DNA of 60,257 nucleotides from Octopus bimaculoides. Lineage: Eukaryota. How positions within the stretch are numbered: position 1 is the stretch's first letter; the number at the start of each line of letters is the position of its first letter. The notes beneath the pieces were generated by a model. It saw only the letters and a program-made list of their open reading frames with translations. It made no database searches and was not told the origin of the DNA. Shown one piece after another: positions 15,835 through 56,382 of this stretch. Location: NCBI RefSeq assembly GCF_001194135.2, contig NC_068994.1, positions 30,043,444-30,103,700 on the forward strand, given 5' to 3'. Made by a program: the position numbers and the translations under genes.

Positions 15835-17190
15835 TCAGTCACTGGGCTGAGTATGAGAAGGGGTTGTTTGTCCTTGGGTGCTGGAGTCAGTAATCTTTGG
15901 GTTCATATTCGACTGGTTTGACATGCCAAGCCCTGCTGCAGGGAACATTTGCAGAGCATGATAAATATGTGTGGTGTTAGCTGGCACTTGAATAGAAGGG
16001 AAAATCTGAGCAATTGGATACATTGGTGTAGCAGCATTCTGAAATATCTGACCACTTCCAGAGACTGCAGTTGCATTAAGAGACTGTGATGTACCAGCAA
16101 TGTTGAGTGTGTGAAGGACTTTTACTTGTTCATCATGTTGTTCTTGATGATGATGATGGTGGTGGTGGTGATGCTGATGATGATGATCATGCTGTTCCTT
16201 TTCAAATGTCTGGTTATCATCAATGCTTTCATTGTCCTTCTGAGGAACGCAGCTCAGCTTTCGTTCCCCCTTGTTTGGTCGATTATGTCTGATAAGGTGA
16301 TCATTGCGGGCAAATGCATAGCCACAGATCTTACATTTGAATGGTCTCTCACCAGTGTGAATTCTTTTATGAATTTTCAGGTGGTCCTTCCTTGAAAGCG
16401 CTTTGCTACAGATGTCGCAACTGAACATCTTATCTGGTTGATGGCTGGTCATGTGGCGTATCAGGTGGTCGTTGCGTGCAAATGCATAGCCACAAGTTAG
16501 ACATCGATACGGTCGCTCACCAGAGTGGATTCTCTGATGTACTTTAAGGTGATCCCTACGAGATAGTGCTTTATTGCAGATATCGCAGGTAAATAGTTTC
16601 TGGTTGCTGTGAATACGTATATGGCGCACAAGATGATCGTTTCTGGCAAATGCAAAACCACATGTGGGGCATTTAAAAGGACGTTCTCCAGTGTGGATGC
16701 GTTTGTGCACTTTCAAGTGGTCACGTCGAGTTAAAGTCTTGTTGCATATGTCACAGCTATAAAGTTTCTCTGGTGCAACAGCTGCTTGTGTTAGTGTTGT
16801 TACAGTTGGTGTGGTGATGGTGGTGGTGGTGGTGGCGGTGGTATTTACATGAGAATGGCAATGATGGTGATTGTGATTGTGCTGCTGGTGATGATGATGG
16901 TGGTGATGGTGTAGGTGAGGTTGATGAGACTGATGGATGTGAAGGCCAGCATGACTGTTGGAAATGTTTGTGATGGCTTTTCCATCAACATTAGACAAGG
17001 TAGCAGAGGTTGAAACATTAGTTGTGAGAGGAATAGGGTTTGATGGTGTGACAAAAGGACCACTTCCCCACACATCATAGGGTGTGCTCTTCTCAACAGA
17101 AGAACCAGAAGTTACTGTGAAGCTGGAAGTGGCCTTGTTCTCAATAGTTTTAGAAGAGGACTCAACATCGGTATTAGCCATTGAATTCAT
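15835..17190 (-). CDS. C2H2 zinc-finger transcription factor (ZNF-A): 6 fingers in three pairs, His-rich tracts on both sides of the array
   Basis: The ORF has six C-x2-C-x12-H units with (T/S)GERP linkers; the sixth lacks the second His. The ORF track starts at a TTG (17211). The first ATG is at 17190, preceded by ttgctttattttaattcag|ac ATG, a 3' splice acceptor, so an upstream exon (UTR or coding) is likely. Confidence 0.93.
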   Translation of the reverse strand: MNSMANTDVESSSKTIENKATSSFTVTSGSSVEKSTPYDVWGSGPFVTPSNPIPLTTNVSTSATLSNVDGKAITNISNSHAGLHIHQSHQPHLHHHHHHHHQQHNHNHHHCHSHVNTTATTTTTITTPTVTTLTQAAVAPEKLYSCDICNKTLTRRDHLKVHKRIHTGERPFKCPTCGFAFARNDHLVRHIRIHSNQKLFTCDICNKALSRRDHLKVHQRIHSGERPYRCLTCGYAFARNDHLIRHMTSHQPDKMFSCDICSKALSRKDHLKIHKRIHTGERPFKCKICGYAFARNDHLIRHNRPNKGERKLSCVPQKDNESIDDNQTFEKEQHDHHHQHHHHHHHHHQEQHDEQVKVLHTLNIAGTSQSLNATAVSGSGQIFQNAATPMYPIAQIFPSIQVPANTTHIYHALQMFPAAGLGMSNQSNMNPKITDSSTQGQTTPSHTQPSD

Positions 17191-17192
17191 GT

Positions 17193-17212
17193 CTGAATTA
17201 AAATAAAGCAAA
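17193..17212 (-). promoter_or_regulatory. 3' splice acceptor just upstream of the ZNF-A ATG
   Basis: The minus strand reads ttttgctttattttaattCAG|acATG: a pyrimidine-rich tract plus CAG two bases before the start codon. Confidence 0.65.
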
Positions 17213-25825: not shown

Positions 25826-26605
25826 TCAGTGTTTGGGCTAAATTTGACGATGAGAAAAAATTAACTTACATGGAAGAGTGGAAGCTATCTGAATATTGGA
25901 AAAGAGTTACCTGTATTATGAGGTTTCATGTCAGGTATCAAAAATGCCGACATCATGACTACTGTTCTGTGAACACTTTAAAAGCTGTAAGACACAATAT
26001 GGACAGCTGCAATGGAGACTATGAAGCTACAGTTGGCAGGAAGGGACACAGCAGGTGTTCTCACTGTGTCTGCATGCCAGCATTCATTCCTACATCTTTG
26101 AACAGGACTTTAGGCTTAATTCAGATGGCTATATGGTCAGTTCCTGACTGTAGAGGGTTGCTGCTAGAAGGCCATATATGTGGCAGCAAGATTCAGCTCT
26201 TTGCCATACTTCCAGAAAGAGTCAGAAGTGGTTGTCTGAGAATTTGTACAACTTTACCAGCACTGATTTCTGGCCTCCCAATCTCCTCCAATTGTAATCC
26301 CATGAATTACTGTGTGGGGTTCAATTGAGAAAAGCATCAACTGCTCTACCTGCAACACCAAGGTTAAGCTGGTGGCCAAGATCAAGGAGGAGTTCAAAGA
26401 TCTTCCCAGAGACATAGTGAGGAACACATGCACCAGGTTCCAGAGCTGTCTTGAAGCCATGATGGCAGCTGCTTTGAGTAAACCGTTATCTCCCAGCCCT
26501 AATCTTGTTGATATTTTTTCTTTCTAAAATACTTTTATTTTTGGATGGGATATTGTTTTCTTTTCCTTTCATGCAAACGGTCAAATTTAGTCCAAATGCC
26601 TTGTG
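25826..26605 (+). mobile_element. Internally deleted Tc1/mariner element, DD37D (maT-like) spacing
   Basis: Imperfect TIRs: gtgtttgggctaaatttgac near 25829 and gtcaaatttagtccaaatgc near 26580. An N-terminal piece (25870-26087) is joined to YIFEQ..RPYMWQQDSALCHTSRKSQKWL..FWPPN/CNPMNY..WGSIE..CTRFQSCLEAM. There are 37 residues between the QQD Asp and the (mutated) third acidic position, with stops and frameshifts. Confidence 0.82.
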
Positions 26606-40797: not shown

Positions 40798-41778
40798 ATG
40801 TACTCCATGCAATCTGTTTACTCCATGAGCGAGCAATTTAGCTGTGATTCATGTGAGAAAACCTTCCAGCTATATGACCAACTTAAGGCTCACAAGAGAT
40901 CTATGCATGCTGGTAGTGGTGAACATAAATCTTTCATATGTGAATTCTGCCACAAGGAATTCAGCCAGATTTCGTCCTTGCGTAACCACGAACGCACACA
41001 CACAGGTGAGAAACCATTCCAGTGCCTGACTTGCAGTAAGTCATTCAGCCAAAGGGGCAATTTGAAACACCATGAACGAATACACACTGGTGAAAAACCA
41101 TTCACTTGCGAGATGTGTGCAAAAGCCTTTAGCCAAGTGTCAAGTCTGCGCAACCATGAGAGGACGCATACAGGCGAGAAGCCTTTCACCTGTCCAACTT
41201 GTTCGAAAGAGTTTAGCCAGAAGGGAAATCTGAAAATACACGAGAGAACACACACTGGCGAGAAACCTTTCACTTGTTCCCTCTGTACCAAATCTTTCAG
41301 CCAGAAAGGAAATTTGAAAACACATATGCGCAACCATGGAGATAAAAAAGAATTCAGCTGCTCCCTCTGTGGAAAAGTATTCTCATGTAAATCATTGCTG
41401 AAATGCCATGAAAAAGCACATAATGTGTCTGAGGCAGGTAGTAGTCAAGGAATTGGCACAGCCATGGGGCAAGAAGCAATAGGGCTGGTCCCAAATACCA
41501 CAACTGCCATTGAGGGCCCAGCAGGCTCCATTGACCTTAGAAAGGACCTATATAACTATCACAGCAACAACAGCAACAGCAACCATAATCACCCACAGCA
41601 CACATCAGCCACCACAAGTGTACAAGCTCAGCAGCCACACTTGTCACAACAGCTGCGCAATCAAACCAACTTTGGTGCTAACTCCAGTGGATTTGATCCT
41701 AGGGATCACCTAGCAGCCTCACAGTTAGATTTAACCACTGATAATCGGCACACTCAAAACAACCGTGTCTATGTGTAA
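40798..41778 (+). CDS. C2H2 zinc-finger transcription factor (ZNF-B): 7 fingers, Asn/Gln/His-rich C-terminal tail
   Basis: 326-aa ORF with seven C2H2 fingers and four canonical TGEKPF linkers. There is an acceptor-like ttagtttttcag ending at 40775 and AATAAA at 41804 and 41820. The frame is open from the acceptor to the ATG, so an upstream coding exon cannot be excluded. Confidence 0.95.
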   Translation: MYSMQSVYSMSEQFSCDSCEKTFQLYDQLKAHKRSMHAGSGEHKSFICEFCHKEFSQISSLRNHERTHTGEKPFQCLTCSKSFSQRGNLKHHERIHTGEKPFTCEMCAKAFSQVSSLRNHERTHTGEKPFTCPTCSKEFSQKGNLKIHERTHTGEKPFTCSLCTKSFSQKGNLKTHMRNHGDKKEFSCSLCGKVFSCKSLLKCHEKAHNVSEAGSSQGIGTAMGQEAIGLVPNTTTAIEGPAGSIDLRKDLYNYHSNNSNSNHNHPQHTSATTSVQAQQPHLSQQLRNQTNFGANSSGFDPRDHLAASQLDLTTDNRHTQNNRVYV

Positions 41779-54756: not shown

Positions 54757-56382
54757 TTATAAAGTCTTGTTTGCTTCAGCAATGTTCTTCGTAGCAACAG
54801 GCTGTGTTGGGCCAATCTGGGTGTTTATTGGGTACATGTGGGTGGCTGCCATTTGAATAGCTGGGAAAATCTGTGAAGTTGATGGAGACATTTGAATAGT
54901 GGGGAATATTTGAGTAATGGGAACACTGGTGATATGATGAAGTTGTTGGTGGCCTGACGCTGCTAACTCTTCAGTGTCTGCAGTTTCAGATGCCAACTCA
55001 GGACCTGGTTGCTGCAAACATGGTGTCAAGTGCTGAGAAATGTTGTTGGCAGTGGTAGTAGTGGTGGTGGTGGGGGTAGTAGTGGTGGTGTTTGCAATGA
55101 TGTTTGGGTCAAAGCTCTCCGAACAAGAAATGTCCGTAGCATTATTGTTACTGTTATTATCAGCTGCTTCTTCATTTGCAATTCTGTTGACATTTTCATC
55201 ATTATTATTTATTTGATCAGTAGAGTCACTCAGATGGTGTTGTAGAAGTTCTTGTGATCCACAACCGACAGAGGAACCTTGATAACCTTCCTTGTTATGT
55301 AATGGGACACAGCTGAATTTTCTTTCCCCTTTATTTGGCCGATTGTGTCGAATGAGATGATCATTTCGGGAAAAAGCATAATCACATATGGTGCACCTAT
55401 ATGGCCGCTCTCCAGAATGTATTCGATGATGCACTTTGAGATAAGAACGTCGAGAGAATGCCTTGTTGCACACCTTGCATGAATAGAGTTTCAACCCTTT
55501 GTGTGTGATGATGTGTCGTTTCAGATTGTCCTGACGGGAGAAAGACTTGCCACACAGATGACATCTATAAGGTAACACCGCTGCGTGGATACGCTTGTGG
55601 ATGTTCACATGGGATGTCTGTGAAAAAGCTTTCCAGCAAATATCACAGTTGAAAGGATTGCTGCCAGCCCGCTGTGCAGATCCCTGGCATGACTGAATAC
55701 TCCGATGAGCTTTGCTATTGCTAGTTACATGCTGGTGTTCTTGTGAAGAGAACTGTCCCATTTCACAGCCCATACTACAGTTGTAAGAGTTTTCTGGACA
55801 GGCTTCTTTACAACTTGAGCAATCATTCACTGGGCACCTACAGGCAACAGCATTTGACTGAAAATGATTGTTGTGATTATTGTTGCAGCTATCCATGCAT
55901 TGGCCGTTTGAAGCACTCTGTCCTGACAATTGTTGATTGGCATGTGTATTGAGACAGCTTTTGCTGTTTGTAACAAATTGTTGGTTAGCATGATGAGTCC
56001 GTATGTGTCGGACAAGGTGGTCACTCCGGCTAAAGGCATAGCCACAAATGTTACATTTGAATGGACGTTCTCCACTGTGCGTTCGCCGGTGAACTTTTAG
56101 ATAGGAACTTTGGGCGAAAGACTTGCTGCATATATCACAGTGATACAGCTTTTCACCTTGGTGAATGCGACGGTGGCGTTCTAAGTTGTCATAACGACTG
56201 AACACTTTGCCACATAAATCACAGCTAGAAGGCTTCTGCCTGCTAGAAGAGACATTTGTCAGAGTAGGTGTTTGTGCAATAAGGGTGTTTCCTGTCAGTG
56301 CTAAATTGGCATTTTGGTTAACATTTTTAGCCAAAGTTTGCAAATCTGTACTTATTTCACTAGAACCTACAACATCCACCAT
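54757..56382 (-). CDS. C2H2 zinc-finger transcription factor (ZNF-C): 3+4 fingers split by a Cys-rich spacer; paralogue of ZNF-A
   Basis: 541-aa ORF with seven C2H2-type fingers and SGERP linkers. It shares the RNDHLIRHNRPNKGERKxSCVP and PIxQIFPxIQ motifs with ZNF-A. Confidence 0.95.
   Translation of the reverse strand: MVDVVGSSEISTDLQTLAKNVNQNANLALTGNTLIAQTPTLTNVSSSRQKPSSCDLCGKVFSRYDNLERHRRIHQGEKLYHCDICSKSFAQSSYLKVHRRTHSGERPFKCNICGYAFSRSDHLVRHIRTHHANQQFVTNSKSCLNTHANQQLSGQSASNGQCMDSCNNNHNNHFQSNAVACRCPVNDCSSCKEACPENSYNCSMGCEMGQFSSQEHQHVTSNSKAHRSIQSCQGSAQRAGSNPFNCDICWKAFSQTSHVNIHKRIHAAVLPYRCHLCGKSFSRQDNLKRHIITHKGLKLYSCKVCNKAFSRRSYLKVHHRIHSGERPYRCTICDYAFSRNDHLIRHNRPNKGERKFSCVPLHNKEGYQGSSVGCGSQELLQHHLSDSTDQINNNDENVNRIANEEAADNNSNNNATDISCSESFDPNIIANTTTTTPTTTTTTTANNISQHLTPCLQQPGPELASETADTEELAASGHQQLHHITSVPITQIFPTIQMSPSTSQIFPAIQMAATHMYPINTQIGPTQPVATKNIAEANKTL

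What the first reader, a model, noticed from the sequence alone, without database searches (positions are those of the whole stretch)
16243..16320. Conserved non-canonical terminal finger shared by ZNF-A and ZNF-C under apparent purifying selection
Both minus-strand genes end their array with YAF(A/S)RNDHLIRH-NRPNKGERK(L/F)SCVP, where the second zinc-binding His is replaced (H-x3-N). Comparing 16243-16320 with 55303-55380 codon by codon gives 26 codons, 15 with synonymous differences and only 2 amino-acid changes. NRPNKGERK is identical despite near-saturated third positions, so the 'broken' finger appears selected rather than decaying. Inference: the downstream Cys may complete a long-spaced C2HC site, or the segment is a capping, NLS or interaction module defining a cephalopod ZNF subfamily.
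Basis: partly seen in the sequence, partly recalled or inferred. Interest (0 to 1): 0.7.

Follow-up and report, generated by a model that had tools for sequence, protein, structure and literature searches.

The report
Conserved broken last zinc finger family
Two octopus zinc-finger genes end in a finger that lacks its fourth zinc-binding residue, yet this finger and a short tail carrying one lone cysteine are strictly conserved across a family of octopus, argonaut and cuttlefish genes, so the feature is real and selected, though it is a variation on the known theme of three-ligand or cysteine-completed fingers.

Summary
Windows 16243-16320 and 55303-55380 (minus strand) give 26 aligned codons: 9 identical, 15 synonymous, 2 replacements. 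Synonymous sites are saturated. Neutral simulation never gave 2 or fewer amino-acid changes in 200,000 trials.

The window is Octopus bimaculoides chromosome CM046614.1. The module C-x2-C-G-[YF]-A-F-x-R-x-D-H-L-x-[RK]-H-x3-N-K-G-x-R-K-L-S-C-V-P ends the finger array in at least 16 protein clusters. Every named one is a coleoid cephalopod (Octopus, Argonauta, Acanthosepion), and several lie in tandem arrays. The second-His position is never His. The downstream Cys is invariant.

The tail keeps the exact spacing of a canonical linker plus the first Cys of a lost finger. Between the two window genes it is the best-conserved segment (dN 0.03, against 0.36-0.45 for canonical fingers).

Most likely this is a working DNA-reading finger with three canonical zinc ligands. 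The fourth would be the lone Cys delivered by a fold-back hairpin, or water.

Naturally three-ligand fingers and Cys-completed fingers are already described, so this is a new lineage-specific variant, not a new kind. One caveat: RefSeq splices the segment out of ZNF-A, while an older annotation keeps it.

The parts
16285..16335 (-). ZNF-A terminal finger core, Cys293-x2-Cys296-x12-His309 (CKICGYAFARNDHLIRH). Recognition helix: R(-1), D(+2), H(+3), R(+6).
   Evidence: The AlphaFold2 core is modelled as a beta-beta-alpha fold (pLDDT 79-86). It superposes on WT1 and Zif268 fingers at 0.5-0.8 A over 20-24 residues.
16243..16284 (-). ZNF-A tail NRPNKGERKLSCVP. Asn313 (16273-16275) sits at the second-His position, KGERK is a fossil linker, Leu is at the aromatic position, and the lone Cys321 is at 16249-16251.
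   Evidence: 13/14 identical to ZNF-C, dN 0.031. One search aligns HLxRHxxxNKGE onto HLLRHQRTHTGE of PRDM9.
55345..55395 (-). ZNF-C terminal finger core, Cys330-x2-Cys333-x12-His346 (CTICDYAFSRNDHLIRH).
55303..55344 (-). ZNF-C tail NRPNKGERKFSCVP. Asn350 is at 55333-55335 and the lone Cys358 at 55309-55311.
   Evidence: Identical in O. vulgaris. 13/14 identical in Argonauta hians with dN 0.046.
15835..17192 (-). ZNF-A main coding exon (open reading frame 15835-17211). It follows the acceptor ttttaattcag| and ends at the stop codon.
   Evidence: The unspliced 451-aa product from Met at 17190 is on record in UniRef and EukProt.
25911..25953 (-). ZNF-A 5' coding exon (MSAFLIPDMKPHNT) of the RefSeq model, with donor ACAG|GTAACT and an 8,718-nt intron.
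   Evidence: Splicing the listed exons reproduces XP_052828547.1 exactly.
16357..16755 (-). ZNF-A canonical fingers 1-5, which together with the terminal finger (finger 6) form three two-finger units. Internal linkers H-SNQKLFTC and H-QPDKMFSC correspond position for position to the terminal N-KGERKLSC.
54757..56382 (-). ZNF-C complete single-exon coding sequence (541 aa). Canonical fingers lie at 55993-56223 and 55417-55647.
   Evidence: This exact product is annotated on GCA_001194135.2 CM046614.1 with the tail included.
15946..16005 (-). ZNF-A C-terminal motifs IFPSIQV and IYHALQM, a second family signature.
   Evidence: Ten of 16 family representatives carry [IVM]FP(T)xIQM repeats.
54850..54909 (-). 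ZNF-C C-terminal motifs IFPTIQM and IFPAIQM.
15987..16334 (-). In-frame 348-nt GT-AG interval (AAT|GTAAGA ... ttttcccttctattcaag|TG). The RefSeq model of ZNF-A treats it as an intron, which deletes the terminal finger, the tail and the first IFPSIQ motif.
   Evidence: The acceptor AG is absent at both homologous sites of ZNF-C (CAA ATG). Transcript support could not be checked.
16770..16955 (-). Second in-frame 186-nt GT-AG interval, removed by the RefSeq model. It covers the His/Thr-rich low-complexity stretch before the fingers.

Best explanation
This is the signature module of a coleoid-cephalopod family of Krueppel-type C2H2 transcription factors. The last finger keeps Cys-x2-Cys-x12-His and an intact recognition helix, but a residue other than His (usually Asn) replaces the second zinc His. 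It is followed by the fossil of a canonical linker plus the first Cys of a finger that no longer exists (N-K-G-x-R-K-L-S-C-V-P). Shown here: the module is translated in annotated genes, it is family-wide, and it is under purifying selection as strong as or stronger than that on the canonical fingers. Inferred: the finger still folds around zinc using its three canonical ligands and reads a G-rich triplet. This follows the standard recognition code for Arg at -1, Asp at +2, His at +3 and Arg/Lys at +6. More speculative: the tail forms a short hairpin, with its turn at N-K-G-x, that brings the invariant lone Cys back as the fourth ligand (Cys-Cys-His...x12...Cys). If not, water fills that position, as in known three-ligand fingers, and the tail caps the shortened helix.
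For: Selection. A versus C: 15 synonymous and 2 replacement codons. No neutral simulation out of 200,000 reached 2 or fewer changes. Tail dN is 0.031, against 0.36-0.45 for the three preceding canonical fingers and 1.4 just after the tail, with dS saturated. Octopus versus Argonauta orthologue: the tail is 13/14 identical with dN 0.046. That equals fingers 1-3 (dN 0.039), while flanking regions have dN 0.51-0.57. The O. vulgaris tail is identical.

Family. An exhaustive profile search found 14 cluster representatives with the tail among its best 150 hits. Named members come from O. bimaculoides, O. sinensis, O. vulgaris, Argonauta hians and Acanthosepion pharaonis. In 16 representatives, counting the two window genes, the second-His position is N (13), T (2) or K (1) and never His. 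The Cys is 16/16, the Gly 16/16 and the Ser 15/16.

Fossil linker. The position-of-His to Cys distance is 7 residues, as in H-TGEKPYxC. A profile of the tail aligns NKGE onto HTGE of PRDM9. ZNF-A's own inter-unit linkers match it position for position. No conserved second Cys or His pair follows the Cys, so its conservation is not explained by a hidden complete finger.

Fold. The AlphaFold2 core is a beta-beta-alpha fold with pLDDT 79-86. The helix stops one residue after His1. Paired beta residues at P25-N26 and K31-L32 imply a fold-back hairpin. The core superposes on WT1 and Zif268 fingers at 0.5-0.8 A.

Precedent. Fingers lacking the last His keep near-normal zinc affinity and DNA binding. 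One example is ZNF711 finger 7; that paper also summarises earlier work by Kluska 2018 and Simpson 2003 (PMC11030341). A finger annotated as degenerate, in ZNF750, turned out to use a downstream Cys (PMC10465944).
Against: No metal-binding evidence was obtainable. The predicted tail is only low to moderate confidence: pLDDT about 50 in the two-finger model and 56-65 in the one-finger model. No coordinates were available to measure the Cys-to-site distance. A spacing of 12 residues between His and Cys is well beyond the spacings listed for described finger-type Cys-completed sites (PMC10465944). RefSeq's ZNF-A model removes the module entirely, so in that gene it may be absent from some or most transcripts. 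The range outside coleoids was not testable, so 'cephalopod-specific' is not proven.
Confidence: 0.5

Rival explanations
1. This is a true three-ligand finger (Cys-Cys-His plus water). The tail is conserved for another reason: capping the shortened helix and touching the DNA backbone with its Lys/Arg residues, a basophilic kinase site (R-K-x-S), a redox-sensitive Cys, or a docking motif for a partner protein.
For: Fingers lacking the last His bind zinc and DNA about as well as canonical ones without any substitute ligand (PMC11030341). The tail is basic, with K/R at -2 from Ser in 16/16 and R or K at -3 in 14/16. The tail has low AlphaFold2 confidence. The His-to-Cys distance of 12 residues has no precedent among described Cys-completed fingers.
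Against: The Cys is the single most conserved tail residue (16/16). It is kept even where Ser is lost (P0145, RKLNC) and where the basic residues diverge (P0188, NAGNTRLSC). A lone invariant Cys next to an open zinc site is most simply read as a ligand. The invariant Gly and near-invariant Asn fit a tight turn.
Confidence: 0.3
2. In ZNF-A the segment is an exon-internal, in-frame intron. The major product would lack the last finger, or the finger would be switched on and off by alternative splicing.
For: RefSeq XP_052828547.1 is reproduced exactly by removing 16334-15987, which has a strong donor (AAT|GTAAGA) and a pyrimidine-rich acceptor. The interval is 348 nt and in frame.
Against: Conservation at the protein level with saturated synonymous sites means the segment is translated and selected. 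The older O. bimaculoides annotation keeps it. ZNF-C, its O. vulgaris orthologue and all Argonauta members are annotated with it. The acceptor AG is not conserved in ZNF-C. Two transcript-like contigs from independent runs carry a family member's uninterrupted reading frame with the tail. This rival is compatible with the best explanation.
Confidence: 0.2
3. The last finger no longer binds zinc. The helix and basic tail act as a nuclear-localisation or protein-interaction peptide.
For: The canonical fourth ligand is lost in all members. The segment is basic.
Against: All three remaining ligands, the core Phe and Leu, and the DNA-contact residues R(-1), D(+2), H(+3) and R/K(+6) are conserved as in working fingers. 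KGERK is not a classical K-[KR]-x-[KR] nuclear-localisation motif. The AlphaFold2 core is a canonical finger.
Confidence: 0.08
4. The similarity is not due to protein-level selection. It would instead reflect neutral decay of a recent duplicate, gene conversion, or a constraint on the nucleotide sequence.
For: None found.
Against: Synonymous sites are saturated. Differences are 14 third-position, 4 first-position and 0 second-position. No neutral simulation out of 200,000 matched. The motif persists across at least 16 clusters and between octopods and a cuttlefish.
Confidence: 0.01

Closest known systems
Naturally three-ligand C2H2 fingers that lack the last His (for example ZNF711 finger 7; PMC11030341, which also summarises Kluska 2018, Simpson 2003 and Merkle 1991)
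   Same: They share Cys-x2-Cys-x12-His with a normal hydrophobic core, and the last His is replaced by a non-ligand residue. Such fingers are reported to fold, to bind zinc with near-normal affinity and to support DNA binding.
   Different: Here the loss is fixed across a whole multi-gene family. It is always in the last finger and is always followed by a conserved 9-residue fossil linker and an invariant Cys. The replacement residue is Asn, whereas ZNF711 has Phe.
Finger-type Cys-Cys-His-Cys domains (ZNF750 finger, FOG/U-shaped, BCL11A, NEMO; PMC10465944)
   Same: A beta-beta-alpha finger in which a downstream Cys, sometimes lying outside the annotated domain boundary, replaces the last His. 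ZNF750 was annotated as degenerate until its structure was solved.
   Different: In those domains the Cys lies a few residues after the His: His43 and Cys49 in ZNF750, and up to His575 and Cys582 in the listed candidates. Here 12 residues intervene, and the Cys derives from the next finger's first ligand. The described examples mostly mediate protein contacts. This finger has a canonical DNA-reading helix.
Classical Krueppel-type fingers with a TGEKP linker (Zif268/EGR1, WT1, KLF4)
   Same: The helix R-x-D-H-L-x-x-H resembles the RSDHL helix of Zif268 and WT1. The predicted core superposes on these fingers at 0.5-0.8 A. The linker length is retained.
   Different: The second His is absent, the linker has degenerated from TGEKP to KGxRK, and no following finger exists.
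Coleoid cephalopod C2H2 expansions (Holzinger et al. 2025, PMC12513265)
   Same: These are lineage-expanded, tandemly arrayed C2H2 genes shared by octopus and decapod lineages.
   Different: That study works at the level of trees and expression. A text search of it found no mention of motifs, linkers, degenerate fingers or C2HC. Which of its clusters, if any, holds this family was not tested.

Membership tests
Classical C2H2 (Cys-Cys-His-His) Krueppel-type finger | Cys-x2-4-Cys-x12-His spacing with conserved Phe and Leu core residues | tested here: met
   CKICGYAFARNDHLIRH and CTICDYAFSRNDHLIRH. The spacing and core residues hold in 16/16 family representatives.
Classical C2H2 (Cys-Cys-His-His) Krueppel-type finger | Second His 3-5 residues after the first | tested here: not met
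   The position holds Asn (13), Thr (2) or Lys (1). There is no His or Cys within 11 residues after His1.
Classical C2H2 (Cys-Cys-His-His) Krueppel-type finger | TGEKP-type linker to a following finger | tested here: inconclusive
   The 7-residue spacing to the next Cys, the Gly and the hydrophobic residue at Cys-2 are retained. However, Thr and Pro are lost and no following finger exists.
Classical C2H2 (Cys-Cys-His-His) Krueppel-type finger | Beta-beta-alpha fold | tested here: met
   This rests on prediction only. The AlphaFold2 model shows a hairpin plus a helix at residues 16-23 with pLDDT 79-86. RMSD is 0.5-0.8 A to WT1, Zif268 and KLF4 fingers over 20-24 residues, with Foldseek E-values not significant for so short a query.
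Natural three-ligand fingers lacking the last His | Three canonical ligands present and no substitute ligand within the helix end | tested here: met
   The nearest candidate ligand is the Cys 13 positions after His1.
Natural three-ligand fingers lacking the last His | Zinc bound by three protein ligands plus water | not testable with these tools
   This needs Co(II)/Zn(II) titration, NMR or EXAFS.
Finger-type Cys-Cys-His-Cys domains (ZNF750, FOG, BCL11A) | Fourth-ligand Cys a few residues after His1 | tested here: not met
   Twelve residues intervene. ZNF750 uses His43 and Cys49, and the listed candidates reach at most His575 and Cys582 (PMC10465944).
Finger-type Cys-Cys-His-Cys domains (ZNF750, FOG, BCL11A) | The downstream Cys actually coordinates the zinc | not testable with these tools
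   Only indirect evidence exists: the Cys is invariant in 16/16 and a low-confidence fold-back hairpin is predicted.
Coleoid-wide C2H2 expansion family | Paralogues in both octopod and decapod lineages, arranged in tandem | tested here: met
   Octopus species, Argonauta and Acanthosepion. Argonauta has an array at 15.56, 15.60, 15.63 and 15.75 Mb of one contig. An O. bimaculoides paralogue lies 0.9 Mb away on the same chromosome.
Coleoid-wide C2H2 expansion family | Absent from Nautilus and non-cephalopod animals | not tested
   Only the best 150 of 6,123 hits were visible, and these were dominated by many-finger proteins. The word-index searches were uninformative.

The most novel reading that the evidence does not exclude
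The module is a new zinc-finger subclass. The fourth ligand would be donated across a 12-residue beta-hairpin by the first Cys of an extinct neighbouring finger (Cys-x2-Cys-x12-His-x12-Cys). That would make it a DNA-reading finger 'stapled' by the fossil of its lost neighbour, fixed for the whole history of coleoid cephalopods. A bolder sub-case is that the Cys is donated in trans, bridging two molecules through a shared zinc.
Probability: 0.4. Interest if true: 0.55.

Novelty: new variant of a known kind. Interest (0 to 1): 0.38.

Why it matters
Databases and gene predictors treat fingers without the last His as degenerate. Here one annotation even splices such a finger out. A family in which the broken finger and its tail are the best-conserved part of the protein is a natural experiment showing that such fingers are functional. 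It also offers a clean test system, in many paralogues, for how a three-ligand zinc site is completed or capped. It gives a simple sequence signature for sorting one coleoid-wide group out of the roughly 1,400 or more octopus C2H2 genes, a gene class linked to the cephalopod nervous system (PMC12513265). The practical value is modest: better annotation, and a candidate new ligand geometry for zinc-finger biochemistry.

Tried and rejected
1. The word-index homology search with the full ZNF-A protein was swamped by vertebrate many-finger proteins. Only the RefSeq model of ZNF-A itself was useful.

2. Word-index searches with the 40-aa module and with a 12-sequence tail alignment returned nothing, although family members exist in the same collection. 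I therefore treat these negatives as a tool limitation, not as evidence of absence.

3. A look-up of the unspliced ZNF-A product in the gene-position index found nothing. The same sequence is nevertheless present in the protein collection from UniRef and EukProt. The chimeric product of exon 1 plus the unspliced main exon is not on record.

4. A profile search of the Protein Data Bank with the tail matched only generic HTGE linkers, plus a chance antibody framework hit.

5. A literal literature search for RKLSCVP, KLSCVP, NKGERK and PNKGER gave one irrelevant antibody hit.

6. Alternative ligand set Cys-Cys-His(+3)-His(+7), from DHLIRH. I rejected it because it would leave only 8 residues between the second Cys and the first His. 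That spacing is described as prohibitive in PMC10465944, and His at +3 is a common DNA-contact residue.

7. A hidden complete extra finger after the Cys. I rejected it because no conserved second Cys or His pair follows in the family.

8. A splice-acceptor explanation for the conserved QIFPxIQ peptide. I rejected it because the AG is absent at both ZNF-C copies.

9. A recent internal DNA duplication in ZNF-A. No tandem repeat of finger-unit length was detected.

10. RNA editing of the Asn codon to His. A-to-I editing cannot turn AAY into CAY. Asn to Asp or Ser is possible but could not be tested.
Full report
**What the window is.** The window has 35.9% G+C and 11 assembly gaps. It carries three intron-poor C2H2 zinc-finger genes:
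- ZNF-A: open reading frame 15835-17211, minus strand.
- ZNF-B: 40798-41778, plus strand.
- ZNF-C: 54757-56382, minus strand.

The exact 541-aa ZNF-C product is annotated on Octopus bimaculoides GCA_001194135.2, chromosome CM046614.1, near 30.10 Mb. The RefSeq protein XP_052828547.1 ('zinc finger protein 239') is a spliced product of ZNF-A.

**Check of the observation.**
- The count is exact: 26 codons, of which 9 are identical, 15 synonymous and 2 replacements.
- Of the 18 nucleotide differences, 14 are at third positions, 4 at first positions and none at second positions.
- Counting from Cys-x2-Cys-x12-His, the Asn of NRP-N occupies the place of the second zinc His.
- Eighteen random substitutions on this segment gave on average 11.5 amino-acid changes, and never fewer than 5 in 200,000 trials.
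- Nei-Gojobori dS is saturated, and dN is 0.031 for the 14-codon tail.

Segment by segment between ZNF-A and ZNF-C:

| Segment | Amino-acid identity | dN |
|---|---|---|
| Three preceding canonical fingers | 46-61% | 0.36-0.45 |
| Terminal finger up to the first His | 74% | 0.13 |
| Tail | 93% | 0.03 |
| 17 residues after the tail | 12% | 1.4 |

The broken end of the array is therefore the best-conserved part of the two proteins.

**Anatomy.** The tail is not an arbitrary peptide. From the position of the missing His to the Cys there are exactly seven residues, as in the canonical H-TGEKP-[FY]-x-C junction between fingers. The Gly is kept, a hydrophobic residue (L, F or W) sits two before the Cys, and the basic residue of the linker is kept. 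ZNF-A's own inter-unit junctions, H-SNQKLFTC-DIC and H-QPDKMFSC-DIC, line up position for position with N-KGERKLSC-VPQ. A profile of the tail aligns HLxRHxxxNKGE onto HLLRHQRTHTGE of PRDM9. So the tail is the fossil of a linker plus the first Cys of a finger that has otherwise vanished. Nothing resembling a second Cys or a His pair is conserved after it.

**It defines a family.** An exhaustive profile search of 1.84 billion representative proteins with the 40-aa module was dominated by many-finger proteins. Even so, 14 of the best 150 hits carry the same terminus.
- Their sources are Octopus bimaculoides, O. sinensis, O. vulgaris, Argonauta hians and Acanthosepion (Sepia) pharaonis. There are also unlabelled contigs from public sequencing runs and one ENA assembly.
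- With the two window genes this gives 16 representatives. Their consensus is C-x2-C-G-[YF]-A-F-x-R-x-D-H-L-x-[RK]-H-x3-N-K-G-x-R-K-L-S-C-V-P.
- The second-His position is Asn in 13, Thr in 2 and Lys in 1, and never His, although Asn to His is a single base change.
- The Cys and the Gly are invariant (16/16). The Ser is present in 15/16.
- Ten of the 16 also share C-terminal [IVM]FP(T)xIQM repeats, which both window genes have.
- Members are arrayed in tandem. In Argonauta, four lie on one strand at 15.56, 15.60, 15.63 and 15.75 Mb of one contig, and a fifth at 10.9 Mb. In O. bimaculoides another member lies 0.9 Mb from the window on the same chromosome.
- The Argonauta gene at 15.63 Mb is the ZNF-C orthologue. 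It is followed on the opposite strand by an 83%-identical orthologue of ZNF-B, so local gene order is conserved.

**Orthologue test.** Between O. bimaculoides ZNF-C and its Argonauta orthologue, the tail is 13/14 identical with dN 0.046. That is as conserved as fingers 1-3 (91% identity, dN 0.039). The flanking non-finger regions are 39-46% identical with dN 0.51-0.57, and dS exceeds 1.5 throughout. The O. vulgaris orthologue has an identical finger and tail.

**Is it translated?**
- ZNF-C, its O. vulgaris orthologue and all Argonauta members are annotated with the module.
- For ZNF-A the annotations disagree. The older O. bimaculoides protein (UniRef/EukProt, 451 aa) keeps it. RefSeq instead removes two in-frame GT-AG intervals, 16955-16770 (186 nt) and 16334-15987 (348 nt). 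The second deletes the terminal finger, the tail and the first IFPSIQ motif.
- The donor (AAT|GTAAGA) and the acceptor (ttttcccttctattcaag|) look good. However, the acceptor AG is absent at both homologous sites of ZNF-C.
- Two contigs assembled independently from two public runs have the same ends and an AATAAA-like signal near the 3' end. They carry the uninterrupted reading frame of another family member, tail included, so they look like mature transcripts.
- I could not examine O. bimaculoides RNA reads, so alternative removal of the finger in ZNF-A remains open.
- The protein-level selection shows the segment is translated often enough to matter.

**How it most likely works.** Everything needed for a working finger except the last ligand is conserved: both Cys, the first His, the core Phe and Leu, and the DNA-contact positions Arg(-1), Asp(+2), His(+3) and Arg/Lys(+6). 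By the standard recognition code (general knowledge, not tested here) this helix reads a G-rich triplet.

AlphaFold2 models the core as a normal beta-beta-alpha finger with pLDDT 79-86. The helix ends one residue after the first His. The core superposes on WT1, Zif268 and KLF4 fingers at 0.5-0.8 A.

The literature shows that fingers lacking the last His fold, bind zinc with near-normal affinity and support DNA binding. It also shows that one naturally occurring example, ZNF711 finger 7, has a stable structure with three ligands (PMC11030341). I therefore take the finger to be functional (about 0.75).

What completes the site is inferred only. The invariant lone Cys next to an open zinc site is most simply a ligand. 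The one-finger AlphaFold2 model pairs residues P25-N26 with K31-L32. This is a hairpin with its turn at K-G-E-R, and it would bring Ser-Cys back beside the end of the helix. It would also explain why the Asn and Gly are conserved. That model has pLDDT of only 56-65 in the tail, the two-finger model was worse, and no coordinates were available to measure distances.

A His-to-Cys spacing of 12 residues has no precedent among described finger-type Cys-completed domains. ZNF750 uses His43 and Cys49 (PMC10465944). I put the Cys-ligand step at about 0.45 and the water-completed alternative at about 0.3. In that alternative the tail would act as a cap, a backbone contact, an R-K-x-S phosphorylation site or a docking motif.

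**Comparison with what is known.** It works like a classical Krueppel-type finger, but it fails the defining second-His test. It meets the sequence definition of a natural three-ligand finger. It does not meet the spacing of finger-type Cys-Cys-His-Cys domains.
- No solved structure contains the tail.
- No paper in the library contains the peptide strings.
- The dedicated study of cephalopod C2H2 expansions does not discuss motifs, linkers or degenerate fingers.

So the phenomenon is known, but this family-wide, tail-bearing version is not described in what I could search.

**Limits.**
- The taxonomic range beyond coleoids is untested. Only the best 150 hits were visible, and the word-index searches were uninformative.
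- The species behind the unlabelled contigs are unknown.
- Metal binding, DNA binding and splicing were not testable.

**Verdict.** The finding is real, statistically solid and correctly read as selected. It is the signature of a coleoid cephalopod zinc-finger family. The mechanism is plausible but unproven. It is a new variant of a known kind and of moderate interest.

Noticed in passing
window 15987-16334 and 16770-16955 (minus strand); exon at 25911-25953: RefSeq XP_052828547.1 for ZNF-A removes two in-frame GT-AG intervals inside the open reading frame. It also adds a 14-codon 5' exon 8.7 kb upstream. The older annotation keeps the reading frame unspliced (451 aa). One of the two models is wrong, or the gene has exon-internal alternative introns.
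   Followed up: partly
window 40798-41778 (+); L001:17195-18199 (-): ZNF-B has seven canonical fingers and a normal last finger. It is 83% identical over its full length to an Argonauta hians gene in the same relative position and orientation next to the ZNF-C orthologue. It is much better conserved than ZNF-A or ZNF-C and does not belong to the broken-finger family.
   Followed up: partly
window 16273-16755 (minus strand): The ZNF-A array is three copies of a two-finger unit: CDICxK[AT]L[ST]R[RK]DHLK[VI]H followed by CxxCG[FY]AFARNDHL[VI]RH. The odd fingers have Leu where the core Phe normally sits. No DNA-level tandem repeat remains, so the triplication is old. All six helices predict G-rich triplets.
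   Followed up: partly
window 15946-16005 and 54850-54909 (minus strand): C-terminal [IVM]FP(T)xIQM repeats are shared by ZNF-A, ZNF-C and 8 other family representatives. They lie 80-200 residues after the fingers and may be a short linear motif for a cofactor.
   Followed up: partly
window 16862-16926 and 16145-16191 (minus strand): Histidine-rich runs (up to 9 consecutive His), encoded by imperfect CAY repeats, flank the ZNF-A finger array on both sides. A Thr-rich run lies at 16807-16842.
   Followed up: no
L001:10001-11422 (Argonauta hians GAB1604234.1): In the Argonauta orthologue of ZNF-C, the fourth finger (CDICWKAFSQTSHVNIHKRIH in Octopus) reads CNVCWKTSSPPPQSDINN and lacks both His ligands. 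This is either a real loss or an annotation or assembly error.
   Followed up: no
P0208 (Geotrypetes seraphini, zinc finger protein 2 homologue), residues 419-450: A caecilian many-finger protein has an internal finger reading HQKTNKGEKLFAC, with the same His-to-Asn change and a KGEK linker. It has none of the other family features and looks like an independent, sporadic decay.
   Followed up: no
window 3629-39438 (11 runs of N): Most of the assembly gaps (10-874 N) are flanked by (TA)n, (GA)n, (TG)n or poly-T microsatellites. The long 'open reading frames' listed across them are artefacts of N translation.
   Followed up: no
tool behaviour: The word-index protein search returned no candidates for the module, although proteins sharing 7-10 consecutive 5-residue words with the query are in the same collection. 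Negatives from that tool for short queries should not be read as absence.
   Followed up: yes
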